Positions 1 through 8,128 of a DNA stretch of 64,000 nucleotides are shown here, piece by piece. This stretch comes from Tetramitus jugosus. Its lineage: Eukaryota > Protista > Heterolobosea. A program made the translations under genes and the position numbers. Numbering within the stretch: position 1 is the first letter of the stretch; every line of letters starts with the position of its first letter. The notes beneath the pieces were generated by a model. The model did no database searches, was not told the origin of the DNA, and was given only the letters and a program-made list of their open reading frames with translations. The stretch lies in the NCBI GenBank assembly GCA_937625935.1, contig OW569360.1, positions 1-64,000 on the forward strand. Direction: 5' to 3'.

Positions 1-778
1 CCAAACCCAAACCCCAAACCCAAACCAACCCAAACCCAAAACCAAACCCAAACCCAAACCCAAACCCAAACCCAAACCCAAACCCAAACCCAAACCCAAA
101 CCCAAACCCAAACCCAAACCCAAACCCAAACCCAAACCCAAACCCAAACCCAAACCCAAACCCAAACCCAAACCCAAACCCAAACCCAAACCCAAACCCA
201 AACCCAAACCCAAACCCAAACCCAAACCCAAACCCAAACCCAAACCCAAACCCAAACCCAAACCCAAACCCAAACCCAAACCCAAACCCAAACCCAAACC
301 CAAACCCAAACCCAAACCCAAACCCAAACCCAAACCCAAACCCAAACCCAAACCCAAACCCAAACCCAAACCCAAACCCAAACCCAAACCCAAACCCAAA
401 CCCAAACCCAAACCCAAACCCAAACCCAAACCCAAACCCAAACCCAAACCCAAACCCAAACCCAAACCCAAACCCAAACCCAAACCCAAACCCAAACCCA
501 AACCCAAACCCAAACCCAAACCCAAACCCAAACCCAAACCCAAACCCAAACCCAAACCCAAACCCAAACCCAAACCCAAACCCAAACCCAAACCCAAACC
601 CAAACCCAAACCCAAACCCAAACCCAAACCCAAACCCAAACCCAAACCCAAACCCAAACCCAAACCCAAACCCAAACCCAAACCCAAACCCAAACCCAAA
701 CCCAAACCCAAACCCAAACCCAAACCCAAACCCAAACCCAAACCCAAACCCAAACCCAAACCCAAACCCAAACCCAAA
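1..778. repeat. Telomeric repeat array (CCCAAA)n, i.e. TTTGGG on the minus (G-rich) strand; chromosome end is at the left
   Basis: About 129 tandem CCCAAA units from position 1, slightly irregular in the first ~50 nt; ends at ...CCCAAA|TCAATT. Confidence 0.97.
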
Positions 779-1782
779 TCAATTCCTTTCTCATAAATCA
801 AAAATTTCATTCAAATTCAAAACAGAATCGATCTATCATCTAAAGTCTGATCAAACAGGATCAATGAAAGCTCAAATCACTAAGTCCATTTCTATTTTCA
901 TCTCTTGACCTTCTCTCCTTAGTTTTTGTCGCAAACATCAAGATTCTCATTTGTGCTCAACATCTGGAAGAATTTGAGGCAAGCTAGGGAGTCAATATAC
1001 GTTTTATGAGTAATCATTTCTCCTTCTCTTCAGTTATGTTGGGTTGGGTCTGGGTATTCAACTCTGCATTCAAGAAAACCATAAAATTTGAGTTCTCATT
1101 CGATCAGAGCCGATCTATCTCAGAAGAAGAATTTTTCCCAAGACTCTCAGTCTATCACATTCATAAATCTGAATTGTCATTCAGAAAAAGCTAGTACTCT
1201 GGATTTCTGACGGGTTGAGTTTGGCGTTTCAACTATAAACTCGATTCAAATTTGAAACTTCACTATTTCACTGTCTTACAGGATTTTACGTAGAAAAGTC
1301 TCATTACTAGATAAAATATCTGATTCTACAGTGATTATTTAATAAAATCTGTCTATTCTATCCAGAAAAACACTAAATCAAGTCTGTCAAAAATTCTGAA
1401 AAATCGGGTACTCAGACACTGAGTCAAAAAATACATTTAGCAGGAAATCATGTTATAAATGATCAAATACTGTCTCAATATCCTGATCCAAACTAAAGAA
1501 ATCAAGTCTCAATCGAATGTCTTAACTCCAGTACAGGATCAAAATCGACTGAAATCTGTTGCAGTTTTAACACTGTTGCCGATAAAAATCTGTTAAATAC
1601 AGCATAGATATATCGGCTCTACGAGCCGATAAAGCTCAAATCGAGTTGAAAACCTCGCCAATCTCTTCATCTCAACCAGCTGAAGCTCCTAGAGCAATAA
1701 AAAATCTCAAAAAAAAATTACCATATAAGGAAATCGTTTCCTTAGGTTGGGGAATCCAGGATGTAGTCCCAAACCCAAACCC
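779..1782 (+). other. Non-coding distal subtelomeric block, possibly the 3' end of a second telomere-capped retroelement copy
   Basis: No credible ORF; ends with AATAAA (1696), TCA9TT (1707-1719) and CCCAAACCCAAACCC (1768-1782); these motifs recur in the same order at 4372-4532. Confidence 0.4.
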
Positions 1783-1792
1783 CAACCCCCCC
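1768..1792 (+). repeat. Interstitial telomeric tract CCCAAACCCAAACCCCAACCCCCCC at the 5' edge of the RT reading frame
   Basis: 2.5 perfect repeats plus a degenerate tail; the RT frame is open from 1767, right after TAG 1764-1766. Confidence 0.85.
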
Positions 1793-1844
1793 AGTCTCAA
1801 CAATCAAGATTCTCACACACTGGTGCATTGATAAGATCTCAAAT

Positions 1845-3662
1845 TTGCACCCATCTATGGGTGAACACCTACGGAAAACAAGACAAATTGAGGATATCAA
1901 TGAATTGTCCATTCCCAAGTTTTATTTGTTGCCAAAAGTGCACAAAGACAAACTCCAAGGTCGACCAATTGTTGCCAGCCATAGTTGGGTCAACACTGAA
2001 GCATCCAAACTGCTCAGCATTAGACTCCGTCTAATGATCACTCAACTACAGCAAAGACGAGACCAGGGTTTACTACCAGTAATGCCCATTGTTTCATCTT
2101 CATATGAAGCGAAACTGGTTCTCAACAAATGGTGCTTGCAGAATGGAGCAACGTGGGAATTCACAGTACATCCAAAGCTGCAAACCTACAGCTATGATTT
2201 CACTGCATTGTACACCAATTTGAGACATGACGTCATCAAAACAAATATGGAGTACATCTTTGAAATGATGCAACAACTTGAACCAAACACTTGGACAAGT
2301 CAAGAAATTGGTGCAATGAAATTGTTGTTGCATTTTGTGTTAACCTGCACATACATTAGATGTGAGGAACTCAACAATAGCATTTTTAAACAAGTAATTG
2401 GCCTTCCAATGGGCACAAATTGTGCGCCTGAATTAGCCAACCTTGTGCTACTTGCTTATGAGTTGCAACACTTGACCAAAGTCAACAGATCCCACTGCAT
2501 TGCAGTGAGGTACATTGACGATTTGTTCATTGCTTGCACAAAAGAGTGCATACCTACCATTGTCAACATGTACAATGGTTCGGATTTGAAACTCTGCAAA
2601 GCAGACAATAATGTTTTCCTGGATTTGCACATCCAATTGGAAAAGTATTATGAGAACTTTGCAGTTCCATTATGGCGCTTTCACTTCAATGTCTACCAGA
2701 AGCCATTGAACAAGTACATGTACTCCATGTACAAGTCAGCGTCTTCATTTGCAGCAAGGAAAGGTCTGATCACAGGTGAGTTGGTAAGATACGCTCGCCT
2801 TGTTGATCACTTCAAACAATTCGATTCAATTCGAACATTGTTTGCCTCTCGGTTAATCCGAAGAGGTTATGACCACCATTTCGTTCAACGAATGTTCAAA
2901 AAGAACAATTACTTTGCACTCATTGAACGATACTGCAAATCAATTGACTGGCAAGCCAGAGTGATCAAGTACCAACAAAAATTGGACTTGCAACACAAAC
3001 CAAAAATTCCACCAATTTGGAAAGTGTTACACTCTGGCAGTGGCATCAATTATCGACAATTGATAAATGCCATTTCTCTCTTCAATGAGATTGACTTGCC
3101 AAAGGAATTGGTCATTTGCAATGTCAGACTTCCCAACATTAGGGAAGTTCTGCACGCATGCAAAACCAAATTCAACACTTGGGTGCAACAATGTGATCAA
3201 ATGCCAAACGAAGAAGAAAAGAAGAAAATGGCAAGAAAATTGATGGACGTTGTTGTTGGTAACCACAAACGACGTTGGCAGCGTACTTCATTTGCTGCAC
3301 AACGACTGATCCGATCCTTTTCGGAAAGGGGAAGTGGTTATTCAACAATTAGACGCCAGTTGCAATTGCGACTTCGCAAAACATCACGCGGGTGCGTGAT
3401 GCTGACGAAGTCAGCAACGCACCTGCGCCCAAACCCACCCAAGACCCAAAATAAGAGGTACTTGAGGGAAAAGGAGGCTGTCGAAGCGGCAATGGCCAAA
3501 CGACACAAAACAACTCCTTCACAGTCCACATGGGACTCTTGCAACGTGAATACAACCGTTGTATCTAAGAGAGTGAGAGATACAAAGGGTTGTACGTTAA
3601 TGCAGAGTGCACCTCGCATCAAGAAACGCAAACTTGATAGCATGGACTACAAGTGGTACTGA
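1845..3662 (+). CDS. Penelope-like reverse transcriptase lacking an endonuclease; first ATG at 1857, probably N-terminally truncated; basic C-terminal tail with NLS-like PRIKKRKL
   Basis: PLE-type motifs PKFYLLPKVHK..GRPIVAS, SYDFTALYTN, QVIGLPMGTNCAPELANL, RYIDD, FLDL, VYQKP, thumb KGLITGELVRYARL..RLIRRGY; no GIY-YIG motif. Confidence 0.92.
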   Translation: MHPSMGEHLRKTRQIEDINELSIPKFYLLPKVHKDKLQGRPIVASHSWVNTEASKLLSIRLRLMITQLQQRRDQGLLPVMPIVSSSYEAKLVLNKWCLQNGATWEFTVHPKLQTYSYDFTALYTNLRHDVIKTNMEYIFEMMQQLEPNTWTSQEIGAMKLLLHFVLTCTYIRCEELNNSIFKQVIGLPMGTNCAPELANLVLLAYELQHLTKVNRSHCIAVRYIDDLFIACTKECIPTIVNMYNGSDLKLCKADNNVFLDLHIQLEKYYENFAVPLWRFHFNVYQKPLNKYMYSMYKSASSFAARKGLITGELVRYARLVDHFKQFDSIRTLFASRLIRRGYDHHFVQRMFKKNNYFALIERYCKSIDWQARVIKYQQKLDLQHKPKIPPIWKVLHSGSGINYRQLINAISLFNEIDLPKELVICNVRLPNIREVLHACKTKFNTWVQQCDQMPNEEEKKKMARKLMDVVVGNHKRRWQRTSFAAQRLIRSFSERGSGYSTIRRQLQLRLRKTSRGCVMLTKSATHLRPNPPKTQNKRYLREKEAVEAAMAKRHKTTPSQSTWDSCNVNTTVVSKRVRDTKGCTLMQSAPRIKKRKLDSMDYKWY

Positions 3663-3828
3663 ACCACAAGATTCGTAGTCAGGATAAACCGTACGGGGTA
3701 CGGCTCCGACTACAGTGCAAATCGCCAACGGCCAATTAAAATGGTCCTACGGACCATTTTTATCGGCCCAATGGGCAATTGCAATCTTCCAAGGTTCAAG
3801 ACTTTTGTGCAGCCAAGTTGACCTGCAC
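3247..3828 (+). ncRNA. Candidate highly structured RNA domain overlapping the RT C-terminal tail and 3' UTR, containing CCCAAACCCA
   Basis: At least 10 stems found by eye, e.g. 3387-3397/3417-3427 plus 3400-3406/3410-3416, 3551-3566/3578-3594, 3675-3713, 3738-3747/3751-3760. Confidence 0.55.
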
Positions 3829-4124
3829 TTTTAGTATAAATAATAAAGTTGTGGTGTAGAGTGCTCATGTTTAGGCACCGCACTAGATTTGCGTCCAGCC
3901 CGAATACCTGTGTTGCACGTAAATATACCACAACTAACAAACAACAACAACATCTCACTCGCCACTCTCGCGCCCCATAGTGGAGTGTTTGAACCCAACC
4001 CTCATGTCAGAAGGTTAAGTCCACCGATAAGAAACAAAAGGAATCATGTCGAGCTAAGGAACATAGAGGAAGCTTATTCAGCAACTCAACTGGTGATGAA
4101 ATTTTATGAAGAAATATTGACAGA

Positions 4125-4376
4125 ATGCTGGCTCCTTTGGAGAGAAAAAGCATAAATAAGGTTACTAATGACACAACCAATATGTCGTACGGAAATTTCA
4201 AGTTGATGATGAACAACCTGAAGAGAAAAAGAGAAATTGATATGAAGAAAGTGGATGAAAAATACAACACTGAAAAGGAGAAACTCAAAGCGAAGTTTTC
4301 CCATCTCCAAAGAGAGTCAGACCCTGACAGTGAAGATTCACTAATTATAGAACTTTCTGGTGAAGAAGATGAATAA
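4125..4376 (+). CDS. Small coiled-coil/acidic-tail protein, possibly an accessory ORF of the retroelement (ATG 4125 or 4182)
   Basis: K/E-rich helical stretch LKRKREIDMKKVDEKYNTEKEKLK; stop overlaps AATAAA (4372-4377), like the stop-adjacent AATAAA of several host genes here. Confidence 0.45.
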   Translation: MLAPLERKSINKVTNDTTNMSYGNFKLMMNNLKRKREIDMKKVDEKYNTEKEKLKAKFSHLQRESDPDSEDSLIIELSGEEDE

Positions 4377-5018
4377 AGGAGCAAAGTTCAAAAAAAATTT
4401 TCTTTTTTTTTTCAGGGTTTTTCAGGGATGAAAAATTCCCTGAAATTCAGGGGAAAAATCGCTGCCAGCGCAATGACAGCTTGGAGACCACAACAACCGT
4501 GGGTTGAGCTAGGTTTATGTATCCCCAACCCAGCGATCCCTTTTCCCATTTTCTACTGCCTGCAGAGCAGATGGGTTCTCAATGGCCACATTCCAGTTAT
4601 GTGGATCAGAACGCTGTTTTGTTCAACAACTAAAATACAATTTTCCTTTATTTCTTCTCGTATGGATATCGAACAAAAGTTCATGTACACCGGTTTGTTT
4701 TGTTTGTTTGTGAAAAAAAAATTTTTTATGTCATTTGGACGGCCATAAAACATTTTCATGTCAAGTCTCCTACACAAAAAGTTTATTTTTTTATGTCAAA
4801 CTCAGGTCACTCATACATATGTGACAAGCATCGGAAAAGATTGGAAGCACAACGAAACGACGAAAGAACCGTTATTTTATTTGTTGAAGGGATTTAGGAT
4901 CAAGGCCATCTTTTCGCGGAACACTATCAATATATGATGTTGTGATGATGTCGGAGATTTTCGCTTTATAATTTTCCGTCCCGAAACAGAAGATGATTTT
5001 CTCCGATTATTTAGCGCT

Positions 5019-5870
5019 TCACAATTTTGTCTTCGTTAGGCCCACCGCAACTGTGGTCAAGAATTCTTTTTTGATGTAGCCATCGACATTGGCTGGTTTA
5101 AACTTGGACATGATCCAAAAGGGCATTGCTTCCAATTCCTTCAGATCTTCGACCAAAGAAGTACCGCCGCCCAAAATGGAAATCAAATCCAAAATTGAAC
5201 TGTCCTTGTTATAGGCAACAGTGAGATTAACAAGAAATTCCCCCACTCGAATCTCGCGAGCGAAGGAATTGAGCTCCGATCCCACTGGCTCTCTTGATTT
5301 GAGAGTTACAAATAGTTTTTGTCCTTCTTTGGTTTGTCTTTTTCGTACTGCGTATCTCATGCAAGCCACTGTTGAAACTGTCTTGCTCAACGTTTCGAAC
5401 TTCTTGTCATCAAGACTTACCAAGTCTTTTACTTGTGTGCTGTCTTCCGTGATGATCTTGTTGGGGTCAAGACGAAAAAGAGTCTTCTTGAGCCAAGAAA
5501 CATTTTTTTGTGTTTATCTAACCCCACTTTGGCGCTCAACTTTTCATACTCTTCTTGGAGTGCCGAAATTTCGTGATTTTTCTTCATCACAGTCTCCTTG
5601 GCCTCTAGTAACTTATTCTGCAGTTGACCGTTGTCAAAGACTTCTCGGTCCAACTTTGTTTGGAGTGTCTTGATAGGGTCTTCATTACTGTCATGGAGGT
5701 GGAGGCCATCTCCATCTCTAGTGATGATCACAAAGGTTTTTAAAGTGCCGTTGGTGGTTGGCAGCACTGCCTCCAGAGAAGGAGAAAGAGTGAAAGGGAT
5801 AGGATTTGTGAGAATTGTTGGTTGGTTGGGTCGTTGGGATTGTTTCCATGACTATTGGGTGCTTGTTCAT
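5019..5870 (-). pseudogene. Frameshifted coiled-coil protein gene (ORFs 5429-5767 and 5019-5423)
   Basis: The 5019-5423 frame stays open upstream to the A7 run at 5503-5509; one extra A would fuse the two ORFs; the upstream ORF has no in-frame ATG near its start. Confidence 0.4.
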
Positions 5871-6403
5871 GACATGTTAGTATATTGATGTACTTTATTG
5901 GAGTACTTACTTACTTTTGTTGGTTCGTTTTTTGATTGATAAATGCGTCACTTAGAATTTTAGTGTGTGACCTGAGGAGAACAATTATGGTCACACGTTC
6001 ACGTGTTCCCCCCTAAGCATTGGTCCAGGCCGAAACGTGCACGTGTGAGGGTAAAATCATTTTTGTTGACAGTTCATGTTATGTACAGTGTTGGAAACAT
6101 AAACAAGGTTAAATTGAATTTGTTCTTTATTATGAGCTTCAATAATGATTGTTTTTCCTACAATGGCAATTATGAAATCACAAGGGCTATTACTTACCTA
6201 ATAACCCAAACATGAACCCAAATCCTCCAGTCGATGTTGTATTCATCAGGTTATTGTATTCACTTCTAAGTATTACGAACAAGTTATGAAGGATTTCAAT
6301 CTTGCAGTTCAACTGGCTGTGTCACAATAGAAGTTCGAACCTTCCGATATCAGTCCCAAATCTTCACATGCGGAACTATCTGGGCCTTCTAAGACATATG
6401 TGA

Positions 6404-6510
6404 ATTTAGGCAACCTGCTGGTTCCACTGAAGAAGTCATATTACAGGCGTAACCAGATAGTTCCACTGACAAAGTCAAGTTTTAGGCGGAACCGGCTGGT
6501 TCCTCTGTAA
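6404..6510. repeat. Degenerate 39-bp tandem repeat, about 2.5 copies
   Basis: CTGGTTCCACTGA..AAGTCA..AGGCG.AACC units starting at 6418, 6457 and 6496. Confidence 0.65.
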
Positions 6511-6644
6511 AAAAGCTTTTATAGCTGGTTCTACCTATTATTTCTCGCAGTGAGAACACTCCTACCTTGCAGGTAATATTGAAGCGTTGCAATACAGTTC
6601 GTAATTCATTGAGCAACTGAATAAATAGTATTGCTTTATTGGCT

Positions 6645-7068
6645 TCAACGATGGCAAATAACAGCTGTGTCTTGTAGTTGCCACGAGTTCTTCACTCCAA
6701 TTTTAAACAGGTCTAAAAGCTGTTTGCAGCTTGGTCTCTCCTCTGGACACTTTTTAGTGCACCAATGGTACACGTATTTCAAAACAATATTCGCCTTCGA
6801 AACATCGTGAGACGTCTCTCCTCCTGTGACGAGCATCAAGTCTTGCGATTTTCCTAAGTGGCTATAAGGTGCTTCCCCTTAAATACGGGGATATGATGAG
6901 ATTATGTCCGATGGGTAGTGCTTTGAACACAACTTTCTCTTGATTGTACAGACGAGTTGCTTCATACGTGTGCAAACCCAGCTGTTTTTCCAATGAAACA
7001 CAGTCCCTGCGATCTAGTGGCATTCCTGGCGGGTATGGCGGCAGTACTACCCACGATTTCATTATCAC
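6645..7068 (-). pseudogene. Possible decayed protein-kinase-like fragment
   Basis: YEATRLYNQEKVVFK resembles kinase subdomains I-II and CPEERPSCKQLL resembles subdomain XI; interrupted by a stop and frame change, catalytic motifs absent. Confidence 0.25.
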
Positions 7069-7173
7069 CGTTCTGTGTGTTTGTTTTTTTGAAATTTTGC
7101 TGGATTTTTGTTTCGCGCTGCAAACACAGATCGGTTTTGGTGCATGAATACCCGATAGCTGGAGAAGAATGTC

Positions 7174-7464
7174 TTAAACAAAGAGAACACCTGCGTACTT
7201 CGAACACATGCCTCTGTCGTAGTCACTCTCAACAGACAGTTTGGAGCATTTATACGAGGGACAAGTCCCTTCAGTACAAAAGCCTTGTTTGCACCAAACA
7301 CACCTCGACAAGTCACAATGTCGAAAGACGTCAGTGGAACAGGAGTCACCAGAGAGAGTTCGATTGATTCGATCAAGGCAGCTTGCTGCCTCAACGTTTG
7401 ATAGAGAGACGGTCAACAGAACAACGAGCAATAGAGCGAAATAACTCTTCGAGACAAGTACCAA
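7174..7464 (-). CDS. Small secreted-type cysteine-rich peptide; no ATG at the 5' end, so possibly a pseudogene
   Basis: Hydrophobic signal-like YFALLLVVLLTVSLSNVEA followed by 9 Cys in ~60 aa. Confidence 0.35.
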   Translation of the reverse strand: MVLVSKSYFALLLVVLLTVSLSNVEAASCLDRINRTLSGDSCSTDVFRHCDLSRCVWCKQGFCTEGTCPSYKCSKLSVESDYDRGMCSKYAGVLFV

Positions 7465-8128
7465 GATGGTGAAAGAGAGAAGGTAACATGGTTTCCAGAA
7501 ATTGTTCGTTCAAAGAGTGACGATACATACACTTTGTTGATTTTACTTCCCGATGGATAAGTAGAAAGATCTACATTCACAAGTGTTCATCTTCGATTGA
7601 TAAGGAATATTGAAGTCATCGAACGTGATTTGAAATCTATATGTCATTCCTCTCAGATGTTACCACCAATATTGAACAGAGAAATAGATACCACCAGAGT
7701 TCAACGTTCGTCACTTTGAACCAACTCTACAATTAGACAAAATTCTTGCTACATCATCCCAGAATGAAGTTTAAAACTGAATATCTGGTTGAACACTTGC
7801 AGTGAGTATCCACTACTCGATTCATTAATCGGACTTATTTACATACCTCCAACAGGTGCTGGAATTCCTCTCGCATATATAGTATTGAACACGATAGTCA
7901 ATTATGAACAAACTCGATTTCGTAAAACAACTTCCTCTGTAGGTATAACTCAAGGTAGAGTTCAGATTTCTAAGAACTCCCAGACGCAACAAAAATTGAT
8001 CAACAGTGGATACATGACGCGTGTTCGTTACTGCTTTGATTGTAGACATTGTCATGGTGGTTGGGGAATAGGTCCATGCAGTATACGTCGCCAATATGAA
8101 CGAAAAAAGAGACTAGAAGCTCAAAACA

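What the first reader, a model, noticed from the sequence alone, without database searches (positions are those of the whole stretch)
3382..3451. Telomerase-RNA-like boundary hairpin plus template embedded in the RT mRNA
Seen: CGCGGGTGCGT (3387-3397) pairs with ACGCACCTGCG (3417-3427), 11 bp with one G-U, and stacks on TGCTGAC-GAA-GTCAGCA (3400-3416). This 18-bp hairpin ends at 3427. The next bases are CCCAAACCCA (3428-3437), 1.67 copies of this chromosome's own telomere repeat, followed by CCCAAGACCCAAAA. A mutually exclusive 8-bp stem (3382-3401) suggests a switch. Known: telomerase RNAs carry about 1.5-2 C-strand repeats with a template-boundary helix immediately 5', and PLE RTs are close relatives of TERT. 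Inference: the element may encode both an RT and, in the same transcript, a template that anneals to or even synthesises TTTGGG. The more conservative reading is that this is the priming site for retrotransposition onto the G-overhang.
Basis: partly seen in the sequence, partly recalled or inferred. Interest (0 to 1): 0.9.

Follow-up and report, generated by a model that had tools for sequence, protein, structure and literature searches.

The report
Conserved hairpin and telomere seed in retroelement
A telomere-attached, endonuclease-free Penelope-like retroelement carries, inside its reverse-transcriptase gene, an evolutionarily conserved RNA hairpin followed by a 10-base telomere-like tract, and new telomeres have repeatedly been joined exactly at that tract; it is most likely a stop-and-cap site, not a telomerase-RNA-like template.

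Summary
The hairpin folds at -32.2 kcal/mol, z -5.6.

The hairpin recurs in five lineages, including relatives with 59% and 44% protein identity from another assembly. It shows compensatory changes that cost amino-acid replacements, so it is a selected nucleic-acid structure.

The tract is less conserved: 10 nt here, 9 nt in one relative and 7 nt in the other.

It is not the element's priming end. The 3' end lies 560 nt downstream (…GTGTTTGAA, 3996), and no copy ends at the tract.

Three 571-bp copies begin exactly at the tract, from at least two origins. Two are fused in register to (CCCAAA)n; in the third another element is joined directly. Five other 5' truncations lie at ordinary sequence.

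The genome has a canonical TERT.

Best reading (inferred, ~0.4): reverse transcription from the 3' end stalls at the hairpin. The nascent cDNA then ends in TGGGTTTGGG-3', a ready telomerase substrate or primer for the next element. Erosion with healing at this seed is an almost equal rival. Self-templated repeat synthesis is not excluded (~7%).

Earlier notes of this scan on this window (PLE at the tip, folded 3' tail) agree.

The parts
1..776 (+). Terminal telomere array (CCCAAA)n; the G-strand TTTGGG is on the - strand, so this is a left chromosome end
779..1767 (+). 'modA', a ~990-bp non-coding terminal element found just under the telomere at many ends (C10, C22, C48, C6, C8)
1768..1790 (+). 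Short irregular telomere tract (CCCAAACCCAAACCCCAACCCCCCC) between modA and the RT copy. Its CCCCAACC part is complementary to GGTTGGGG in the modA tail.
1791..3996 (+). 5'-truncated copy of an endonuclease-free Penelope-like retroelement. It corresponds to the last 2.2 kb of the 5,039-bp full-length copy on contig C10 and ends ...GTGGAGTGTTTGAA.
1791..3662 (+). RT open reading frame, open at its 5' end, stop TGA at 3660-3662. It has RVT_1 motifs (YIDD), and the DKN motif is present in the longer copies. The C-terminal tail has NLS-like KKRKLD and the conserved MDYKWY*.
3387..3427 (+). Two-tier hairpin: an 11-bp outer stem (one G-U) stacked on a 7-bp inner stem with a GAA loop. It is conserved with compensatory changes in five lineages.
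3428..3437 (+). CCCAAACCCA, 1.67 C-strand telomere repeats in frame (Pro-Asn-Pro). It is the 5' end of three 571-bp copies elsewhere in the genome.
3428..3451 (+). Extended C/A-rich tract CCCAAACCCACCCAAGACCCAAAA with four C3 runs. Its complement on the cDNA strand has the form of a G-quadruplex motif (inference from sequence only).
3438..3996 (+). 'Module C': the last 75 codons plus a 334-nt 3' UTR, a structured 3' domain. With the tract it makes up the 571-bp mini-copies.
3551..3594 (+). Second conserved hairpin inside the coding tail: 16 pairs, 5 with compensatory changes, with a conserved loop AAGAGUGAGAG
3997..4005 (+). Degenerate 9-nt telomere remnant (CCCAACCCT) onto which this copy was added

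Best explanation
Window 1791-3996 is a 5'-truncated copy of an endonuclease-free Penelope-like retroelement. Such elements extend chromosome ends by target-primed reverse transcription from the G-overhang. The element's RNA has the sense of the C-strand, and its 3' end (...GUGUUUGAA, 3996) is where cDNA synthesis starts. The hairpin at 3387-3427 is a selected nucleic-acid structure, read here as RNA. It marks the 5' edge of the element's structured ~570-nt 3' domain. It is the most stable stem the RT meets after copying that domain.

Inferred mechanism: a fraction of cDNAs stop at the base of the hairpin. Because the last 10 nt copied are CCCAAACCCA, the abortive cDNA, which is now the chromosome's G-strand end, finishes in TGGGTTTGGG-3'. 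Host telomerase can extend that end in register. Alternatively it can pair directly with the C-rich 3' tail of the next element RNA. The tract therefore acts as a built-in telomere seed that turns failed retrotransposition into a capped end, leaving 571-bp mini-copies.

Shown: the structure and its conservation, the element anatomy, the in-register junctions and the presence of TERT. Inferred: that the hairpin causes the stop, and that telomerase rather than the element's own RT adds the repeats.
For: 1. Anatomy. Chromosome ends carry arrays of elements, all with the 5' end distal, separated by 8-80-nt telomere tracts.

2. Hairpin. Every lineage folds it with z between -4.6 and -5.6. 93% of cells pair, against 22-48% when partners are slid. 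Three pairs change on both sides. One pair shows the series C-G / U-G / U-A, at the cost of Arg to Cys and Arg to His replacements. Nucleotide identity to the 44% relative is 74% in the hairpin, against 47% upstream and 42% downstream.

3. Hot spot. Of 10 copies containing the 5' edge of module C, 3 start exactly at the tract. C3:665 is fused to the terminal telomere. C10 is fused to an 80-nt tract and has a different downstream flank. C9:1719 is a 70%-diverged lineage with element X joined directly. The other five 5' truncations are at non-telomeric sequence. No other telomere match in the element exceeds 7 nt.

4. A canonical TERT with RBD, RVT_1 and TERT_C domains is present.

5. The published model for EN(-) PLEs is pairing of the RNA with unprotected telomeres, reverse transcription, then telomere addition by host telomerase (PMC13159263; PMC8557442).
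Against: There is no direct evidence that the RT stalls here. The public runs are kept only as contigs, so no RNA or cDNA ends could be seen. Erosion or breakage followed by healing at the best internal seed gives the same junctions without any role for the hairpin. One other truncation (C22) lies inside a different hairpin, not at its base. The tract is only 7 nt in the 44% relative although the hairpin is intact. The two features are therefore not an obligate pair, and the hairpin probably has a further function such as RT binding or translational pausing. Pro-Asn-Pro coding constraint could explain part of the tract's conservation. C3 and C10 mini-copies are 100% identical and could be copies of one mobile mini-element, which lowers the number of independent events to two.
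Confidence: 0.4

Rival explanations
1. Erosion or breakage plus healing. Resident longer copies at the tip lose their distal (5') part by telomere loss or by a break, perhaps at the palindrome. Telomerase re-seeds preferentially when the G-strand end reaches TGGGTTTGGG. The hairpin has an unrelated function: an RT-binding or cis-recognition signal at the edge of the 3' domain, or a ribosome pause before the NLS tail.
For: The in-register junctions are the same as in the best explanation. The tract is the only seed of 8 nt or more in the element. TERT is present. Hairpin conservation is decoupled from the tract in L030. Module C holds other covarying hairpins, as expected for an RT-recognition domain.
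Against: Ends at ordinary sequence are capped as well, so a seed is not required. Erosion from the 5' side would pass twelve 6-7-nt seeds before reaching this one, and none of them is used. The position of the tract flush against the strongest stem would be a coincidence.
Confidence: 0.3
2. Telomerase-RNA-like self-templating. The PLE RT copies CCCAAACCCA, is halted by the hairpin acting as a template boundary, realigns on the 3' CCCA and copies again. It thereby makes (TTTGGG)n itself and caps its own cDNA.
For: The geometry fits a telomerase template, with 4 nt for alignment plus 6 nt of template and a helix directly 5'. Three copies run from the tract straight into telomere repeats in register. 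The hairpin is under selection. PLE RTs are the sister group of TERT (PMC8557442).
Against: A canonical TERT exists. Truncations without any template nearby are capped too. The tract is 9 nt in L029 and only 7 nt (1.17 repeats) in L030. There is no Rfam telomerase-RNA match. The tract lies in a translated region. No Telomerase_RBD match was listed for the element's RT.
Confidence: 0.07
3. Internal priming site. The G-overhang anneals to the internal tract and cDNA synthesis starts there, so the tract is the functional 3' end. It is analogous to the fold-plus-reverse-complement-repeat 3' ends of Athena/Terminons.
For: The architecture, a stable fold immediately followed by C-strand repeats, matches the published 3' ends of telomeric PLEs (PMC6431247).
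Against: 0 of 7 genomic copies and 0 of 2 foreign relatives end at the tract. All continue into module C, and the element's junction with target telomere tracts is at ...GTGTTTGAA. The copies starting at the tract have the opposite polarity to what internal priming would give.
Confidence: 0.03
4. No nucleic-acid function. The hairpin is a by-product of an Arg/Gly/Pro-rich peptide, and the tract is chance Pro-Asn-Pro codons. The coincident truncations are then one inherited event plus chance.
For: The peptide SRGxVxLTKS...RP is conserved. The shuffle control for covariation is only 22/500 with five sequences. A 10-mer somewhere in a 5-kb element is expected about 0.09 times.
Against: Pairing is kept through non-synonymous changes on both arms. 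Hairpin nucleotides are far better conserved than flanking codons. The truncations occur in two lineages 70% apart, and with different flanks.
Confidence: 0.1

Closest known systems
Endonuclease-deficient Penelope-like elements (Athena/Terminons of bdelloid rotifers; Coprina of fungi, diatoms and Selaginella)
   Same: The RT has the DKN motif, RT motifs and a C-terminal NLS, and no endonuclease. The location is strictly terminal, with the 5' end distal. Copies are 5'-truncated and capped by short species-specific telomere tracts, in head-to-tail chains with non-autonomous partners. The full-length copy has an upstream ORF1 (PMC8557442, PMC6431247, PMC13159263).
   Different: No hammerhead ribozyme motif was found. 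The fold-plus-telomere-complement module sits 560 nt inside the element and within the ORF, not at the 3' terminus, and it marks 5' ends of copies, not 3' ends. The host is a protist with TTTGGG telomeres. That repeat is published for Naegleria gruberi (PMC3622300), but the host's identity was not verified here.
Telomerase RNA template with template-boundary helix
   Same: 1.67 C-strand repeats lie immediately 3' of a stable, conserved helix, and the associated RT is from the sister clade of TERT.
   Different: It is embedded in an mRNA coding region. There is no pseudoknot or TERT-binding domain evidence. The tract is not conserved across the family. A separate canonical TERT exists. Reiterative copying is untested.
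De novo telomere addition (chromosome healing) at internal telomere-like seeds
   Same: New telomere repeats start in register at a short internal G-strand match (general knowledge, from memory, of healing at internal seeds; it was not checked in a paper here).
   Different: Here the seed is carried by a mobile element, is flanked by a conserved hairpin, and has been used repeatedly within one element family.
3'-domain stem-loops recognised by retrotransposon RTs (for example R2 and stringent-type LINE 3' UTR structures)
   Same: There is a covarying set of hairpins in the last ~600 nt of the template RNA.
   Different: Two of the hairpins lie in coding sequence. Binding by the RT was not tested. 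The comparison to R2 and LINE structures is from memory and was not checked here.

Membership tests
EN(-) Penelope-like element (Athena/Coprina type) | RT with the DKN motif, RT motifs 1-7 and a thumb | tested here: met
   DTDKNLGTAVW, FYLLPKVHK, GLPMGTNCAPE and RYIDDLF are present in the 713-aa copy. There is a weak RVT_1 hit. Homologues down to 25% identity carry HTH_animal, DUF8422 and RVT_1, including Puccinia 'reverse transcriptase'. The nearest atlas clusters have the same Pfam set, with Rotifera the commonest taxon. No tree was built, so the clade (Athena versus Coprina) is undecided.
EN(-) Penelope-like element (Athena/Coprina type) | No GIY-YIG endonuclease | tested here: met
   Pfam finds only RVT_1. 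The ORF ends 75 codons after the hairpin in a basic NLS-like tail.
EN(-) Penelope-like element (Athena/Coprina type) | Terminal location, 5' end distal, 5' truncations capped by telomeric repeats | tested here: met
EN(-) Penelope-like element (Athena/Coprina type) | Hammerhead ribozyme fold near the 3' end | tested here: not met
   An Rfam scan of 700-4600 at E<=10 gives no hammerhead family. A divergent ribozyme cannot be excluded.
EN(-) Penelope-like element (Athena/Coprina type) | Short reverse-complement telomeric repeats at the RNA 3' terminus | tested here: inconclusive
   Every 3' end abuts a tract of 8-40 nt. Element-borne and target-borne repeats cannot be told apart. For the partner elements X and modA the tail looks element-borne.
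Telomerase RNA | Template of about 1.5-2 repeats complementary to the telomere | tested here: inconclusive
   10 nt in this genome's copies, 9 nt in L029 and 7 nt in L030
Telomerase RNA | Template-boundary helix 5' of the template | tested here: met
   A conserved hairpin ends 0-1 nt before the tract. This shows geometry only, not function.
Telomerase RNA | Match to a described TR family; pseudoknot or TERT-binding stem | tested here: not met
   There is no Rfam TR match. The pseudoknot was not searched for specifically.
Telomerase RNA | Reiterative copying of the template by its RT | not testable with these tools
   This needs a biochemical assay.
-1 programmed ribosomal frameshift signal | In-frame slippery heptamer X_XXY_YYZ with a downstream stimulatory structure, conserved | tested here: not met
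   C_CCA_AAC is in frame here, and the -1 frame stops after 8 codons. However, the structure lies upstream, and the heptamer is lost in L029 (T_CCA_AAC) and L030.

The most novel reading that the evidence does not exclude
The element is a self-capping retroelement. Its Penelope-like RT uses the hairpin as a template boundary and CCCAAACCCA in its own mRNA as a reiterative template, synthesising TTTGGG repeats on the nascent cDNA. It would be a living intermediate between a terminal retrotransposon and the telomerase RNP.
Probability: 0.07. Interest if true: 0.9.

Novelty: new variant of a known kind. Interest (0 to 1): 0.55.

Why it matters
Endonuclease-free Penelope-like elements are the closest mobile relatives of telomerase. 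How they attach to and are re-capped at chromosome ends is known only from sequence anatomy in rotifers and fungi. Three things are new here:
- They occur in a protist with TTTGGG telomeres.
- They lack the usual hammerhead fold.
- They carry a selected hairpin flush against an internal telomere seed, where new chromosome ends have repeatedly formed.

If the hairpin makes the RT stop there, the element has a fail-safe that turns abortive copies into capped ends. If the RT re-copies the tract, it would be a model for the origin of the telomerase template. Both ideas can be tested with one primer-extension experiment.

Tried and rejected
- Hammerhead, telomerase RNA or any other Rfam family in 700-4600: nothing above noise.
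- Solved-structure sequence search with the RT: no hit.
- Search for short ORFs containing only the C-terminal 199 aa: none. This says nothing about longer or shorter kin.
- Two metagenome pattern scans, one for the conserved MDYKWY codons and one for the hairpin core: none.
- Public runs: only Logan contigs were available, so no RNA ends, strand or expression could be read. One soil RNA-Seq run and soil WGS runs (filed as metatranscriptomic, probably DNA) hold near-identical pieces. One contig of the RNA-Seq run spans the 3' end, a short tract and what may be the start of another element, which is no proof of transcription.
The copy census therefore rests on BLAST-type searches of the whole genome plus 15 fetched ends.
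- -1 frameshift signal: rejected (see membership test).
- 'Switch' with the alternative 8-bp stem: rejected, because the long hairpin is the preferred fold where the stem was included and the stem is not conserved.
- Internal priming site: rejected, because no copy ends at the tract.
- A simple segmental duplication explaining both the C3 and C10 mini-copies: rejected. Their downstream flanks differ, with a 40-nt tract plus a truncated copy in one and an 8-nt tract plus a full-length copy in the other.

Full report
**What is in the window**

The window starts with 776 nt of (CCCAAA)n, so it is a left chromosome end with TTTGGG telomeres. Below the telomere lie three units:
- a ~990-bp non-coding element ('modA', 779-1767);
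- a 23-nt irregular telomere tract (1768-1790);
- a 2.2-kb reverse-transcriptase element (1791-3996), which ends ...GTGGAGTGTTTGAA and is followed by a 9-nt telomere remnant.

The RT frame is open from 1791 to a TGA at 3660-3662.

Whole-genome searches find the same element almost only at contig ends (C3, C9 both ends, C10, C48). Internal relics lie on C50 and C7. Most copies lie with the 5' end towards the telomere; one fragment on C29 is inverted. Copies are truncated at different 5' positions, and most are preceded by 8-80 nt of telomere repeats.

One copy on C10 is full length. It is 5,039 bp, with an upstream ORF and an RT frame open for 1,273 codons.

**What kind of element it is**

The protein has the DKN motif, FYLLPKVHK, GLPMGT and YIDD. 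Pfam gives only a weak RVT_1 match and no endonuclease. Its database relatives carry the HTH_animal, DUF8422 and RVT_1 combination and include rust-fungus 'reverse transcriptases'. The nearest atlas clusters have the same families, with rotifers the commonest taxon.

Together with the terminal anatomy, this fits the endonuclease-deficient Penelope-like elements (Athena/Coprina) described in PMC8557442, PMC6431247 and PMC13159263.

One expected feature was not found: an Rfam scan gives no hammerhead ribozyme.

TTTGGG telomeres are published for the heterolobosean Naegleria gruberi (PMC3622300). That the host is such an amoeba is an inference I did not verify.

**The observation**

The fold is -32.2 kcal/mol, z -5.6. 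The 10-mer is the only telomere match longer than 7 nt in the 5,039-bp element.

**Is the hairpin selected?**

Five lineages could be compared:
- the window copy;
- two copies about 92% identical (C9, C50);
- two relatives from another assembly (GCA_037189345.1), with 59% (L029) and 44% (L030) protein identity. Both lie behind CCCAAA-type tracts.

All five fold the same two-tier hairpin, with z between -4.6 and -5.6. On the alignment 93% of cells pair, against 22-48% when the partners are slid by 1-3 columns. Three pairs change on both sides; 22 of 500 shuffles reach these values, which is modest with five sequences.

The codon view is the more telling. One outer-stem pair runs C-G (L029, L030), U-G (C9) and U-A (window). 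These changes replace Arg by Cys on one arm and Arg by His on the other. An inner-stem pair goes C-G to U-A.

Against the most distant relative, nucleotide identity is 74% in the hairpin, 47% in the 83 codons upstream and 42% in the 11 codons downstream. The hairpin is therefore constrained as nucleic acid, not only as peptide.

A second hairpin further down the coding tail (3551-3594) has 5 of 16 pairs with compensatory changes. The last ~600 nt thus look like a structured 3' domain, with the hairpin in question at its 5' edge.

**Is the tract selected?**

Less clearly. The tract is:
- CCCAAACCCA in most copies of this genome (ACCAAACCCA in the degenerate C50 copy) and in a 70%-diverged lineage on C9;
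- TCCAAACCCA in L029;
- only CCAAACC in L030.

It encodes Pro-Asn-Pro in a basic, proline-rich linker. Protein constraint plus codon preference could therefore explain part of its conservation. The hairpin clearly survives without a full tract.

**Not the priming site**

All seven copies that extend 5' of the tract, and both foreign relatives, continue through it to the conserved C-terminus MDYKWY* and on to the conserved 3' end. That 3' end abuts telomere tracts of 8-40 nt. No copy ends at the tract.

**A hot spot for new ends**

Three copies begin exactly at the tract:
- On C3, the 670-nt terminal telomere runs in register into CCCAAACCCA-CCCAAG... and the 571-bp remainder of the element.
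- On C10, the same 571 bp follow an 80-nt tract. The downstream flank differs from C3: an 8-nt tract and the full-length copy, instead of a 40-nt tract and a truncated copy. The two are therefore not one duplicated segment.
- On C9, a 70-79% diverged version starts at the same tract and keeps an open, protein-like frame to the same stop. A different element (X) is joined directly to the tract. Elsewhere X ends in ...GACAGA + CCCAAACCCAAACCCAACCC.

So 3 of the 10 copies containing this region start at the tract, from at least two independent origins. The five other 5' truncations are at ordinary sequence, and none of the twelve 6-7-nt seeds upstream of the tract is used.

With about 10 nt out of ~2,500-5,000 as the target, two or three hits out of about eight truncations would be expected by chance well under once in a thousand. 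This is my estimate.

**Mechanism**

cDNA synthesis runs from 3996 towards 1791. The last bases copied before the hairpin are the tract, so a cDNA that stops at the stem ends in TGGGTTTGGG-3'. That end is a perfect telomerase substrate, and it is complementary to the C-rich tails of partner elements.

A canonical TERT (Telomerase_RBD 134 bits, RVT_1, TERT_C) is encoded on C31. The published model for such elements already assigns re-capping to host telomerase.

I therefore favour 'stall at the hairpin, cap at the seed' at about 0.4. Erosion or breakage of resident copies, with healing at the best seed, predicts the same junctions and leaves the hairpin another role; I put it at about 0.3.

Self-templated repeat synthesis by the element's RT fits the geometry and the junctions. 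However, it is unnecessary given TERT and the capping of seedless ends, and it is weakened by the 7-nt tract of L030; I put it at about 0.07.

The available data cannot separate these readings. The public runs are kept as contigs only and show no molecule ends.

**Limits**

- Only five lineages were available for covariation.
- The organism was not identified.
- No RT phylogeny was built.

Noticed in passing
window 1725-1790; L017 3205-3273; L029 85-148; L030 95-152: modA-type non-autonomous elements carry a G-strand-like segment (GGTTGGGG, or GGGTTGGGTATGGGTTT) 15-25 nt before their 3' junction. This segment is complementary to the irregular part of the following C-tract (CCCCAACC, or AAACCCAACCC). 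The result is a 3'-terminal hairpin (z -2.2 to -4.0), seen in this genome and in the source assembly of L029/L030. The matching irregularities suggest the tract is part of the element's own tail.
   Followed up: partly
L017 863-1718 and loci L033-L044: Element 'X' (~856 bp, non-coding) matches at about 45 places on some 25 contigs, mostly near contig ends. In 11 of the 12 copies whose 3' end was read, it ends ...AACAAGACAGA followed by a near-constant ~20-nt tail, CCCAAACCCAAACCCAACCC, then different unique-looking DNA at each place; the twelfth is the C9 copy joined at the 10-nt tract. It looks like the first element added to a healed or broken end.
   Followed up: partly
G000:C10, L026 reverse strand 2428-7466: A full-length 5,039-bp copy of the RT element. 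It starts TATTTGAGTGG after an 8-nt tract. It has an upstream ORF starting near 2473 and an RT frame open for 1,273 codons from 3309. This is the two-ORF layout that the literature gives as typical of Athena.
   Followed up: partly
G000:C50 ~168.6-169.8 kb (L019 4602-5756); G000:C7 ~597,964-598,120 (L021 4965-5121): Interstitial relics of the element, each still followed by an 8-10-nt telomere tract, lie far from contig ends. On C50 the tract is followed by what looks like another element's 5' end (TTTGAGTAG...). They may be former chromosome ends or repair insertions.
   Followed up: no
G000:C31:282628-286011 (L013 505-3384): Canonical TERT gene, open frame of at least 960 codons, with Telomerase_RBD, RVT_1 and TERT_C domains.
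   Followed up: yes
window 3551-3594: A second conserved hairpin inside the coding tail (5 of 16 pairs compensatory). Its invariant loop AAGAGUGAGAG encodes the conserved KRVRD.
   Followed up: yes
window 3806-3850: A hairpin GTGCAG...CTGCAC with a conserved AGTTGAC loop (GTGTAC...GTACAC in L030, apparently covarying). It is followed by the conserved TATAAATAATAAAG, which could be a TATA-like or poly(A)-like signal ~150 nt before the element's end. A promoter reading into the next element, as in HeT-A, is conceivable.
   Followed up: no
window 3428-3451, - strand: The complement of the tract, TTTTGGGTCTTGGGTGGGTTTGGG, has four G3 runs. It has the form of a G-quadruplex motif at the 3' end of a cDNA stalled at the hairpin. 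It is present only in this genome's lineage.
   Followed up: no
L018 reverse strand ~4240-4275 (G000:C9 ~602.7 kb): A degenerate copy lost 76 nt between two GAAGT direct repeats (window equivalents 3331 and 3407). The deletion removes the 5' arms of the hairpin and shifts the frame.
   Followed up: yes
window 1791-3996: One soil RNA-Seq run and soil WGS runs from a second study (filed as metatranscriptomic, probably DNA) hold pieces 95-100% identical to the element. This suggests the organism or a close relative lives in soil.
   Followed up: partly
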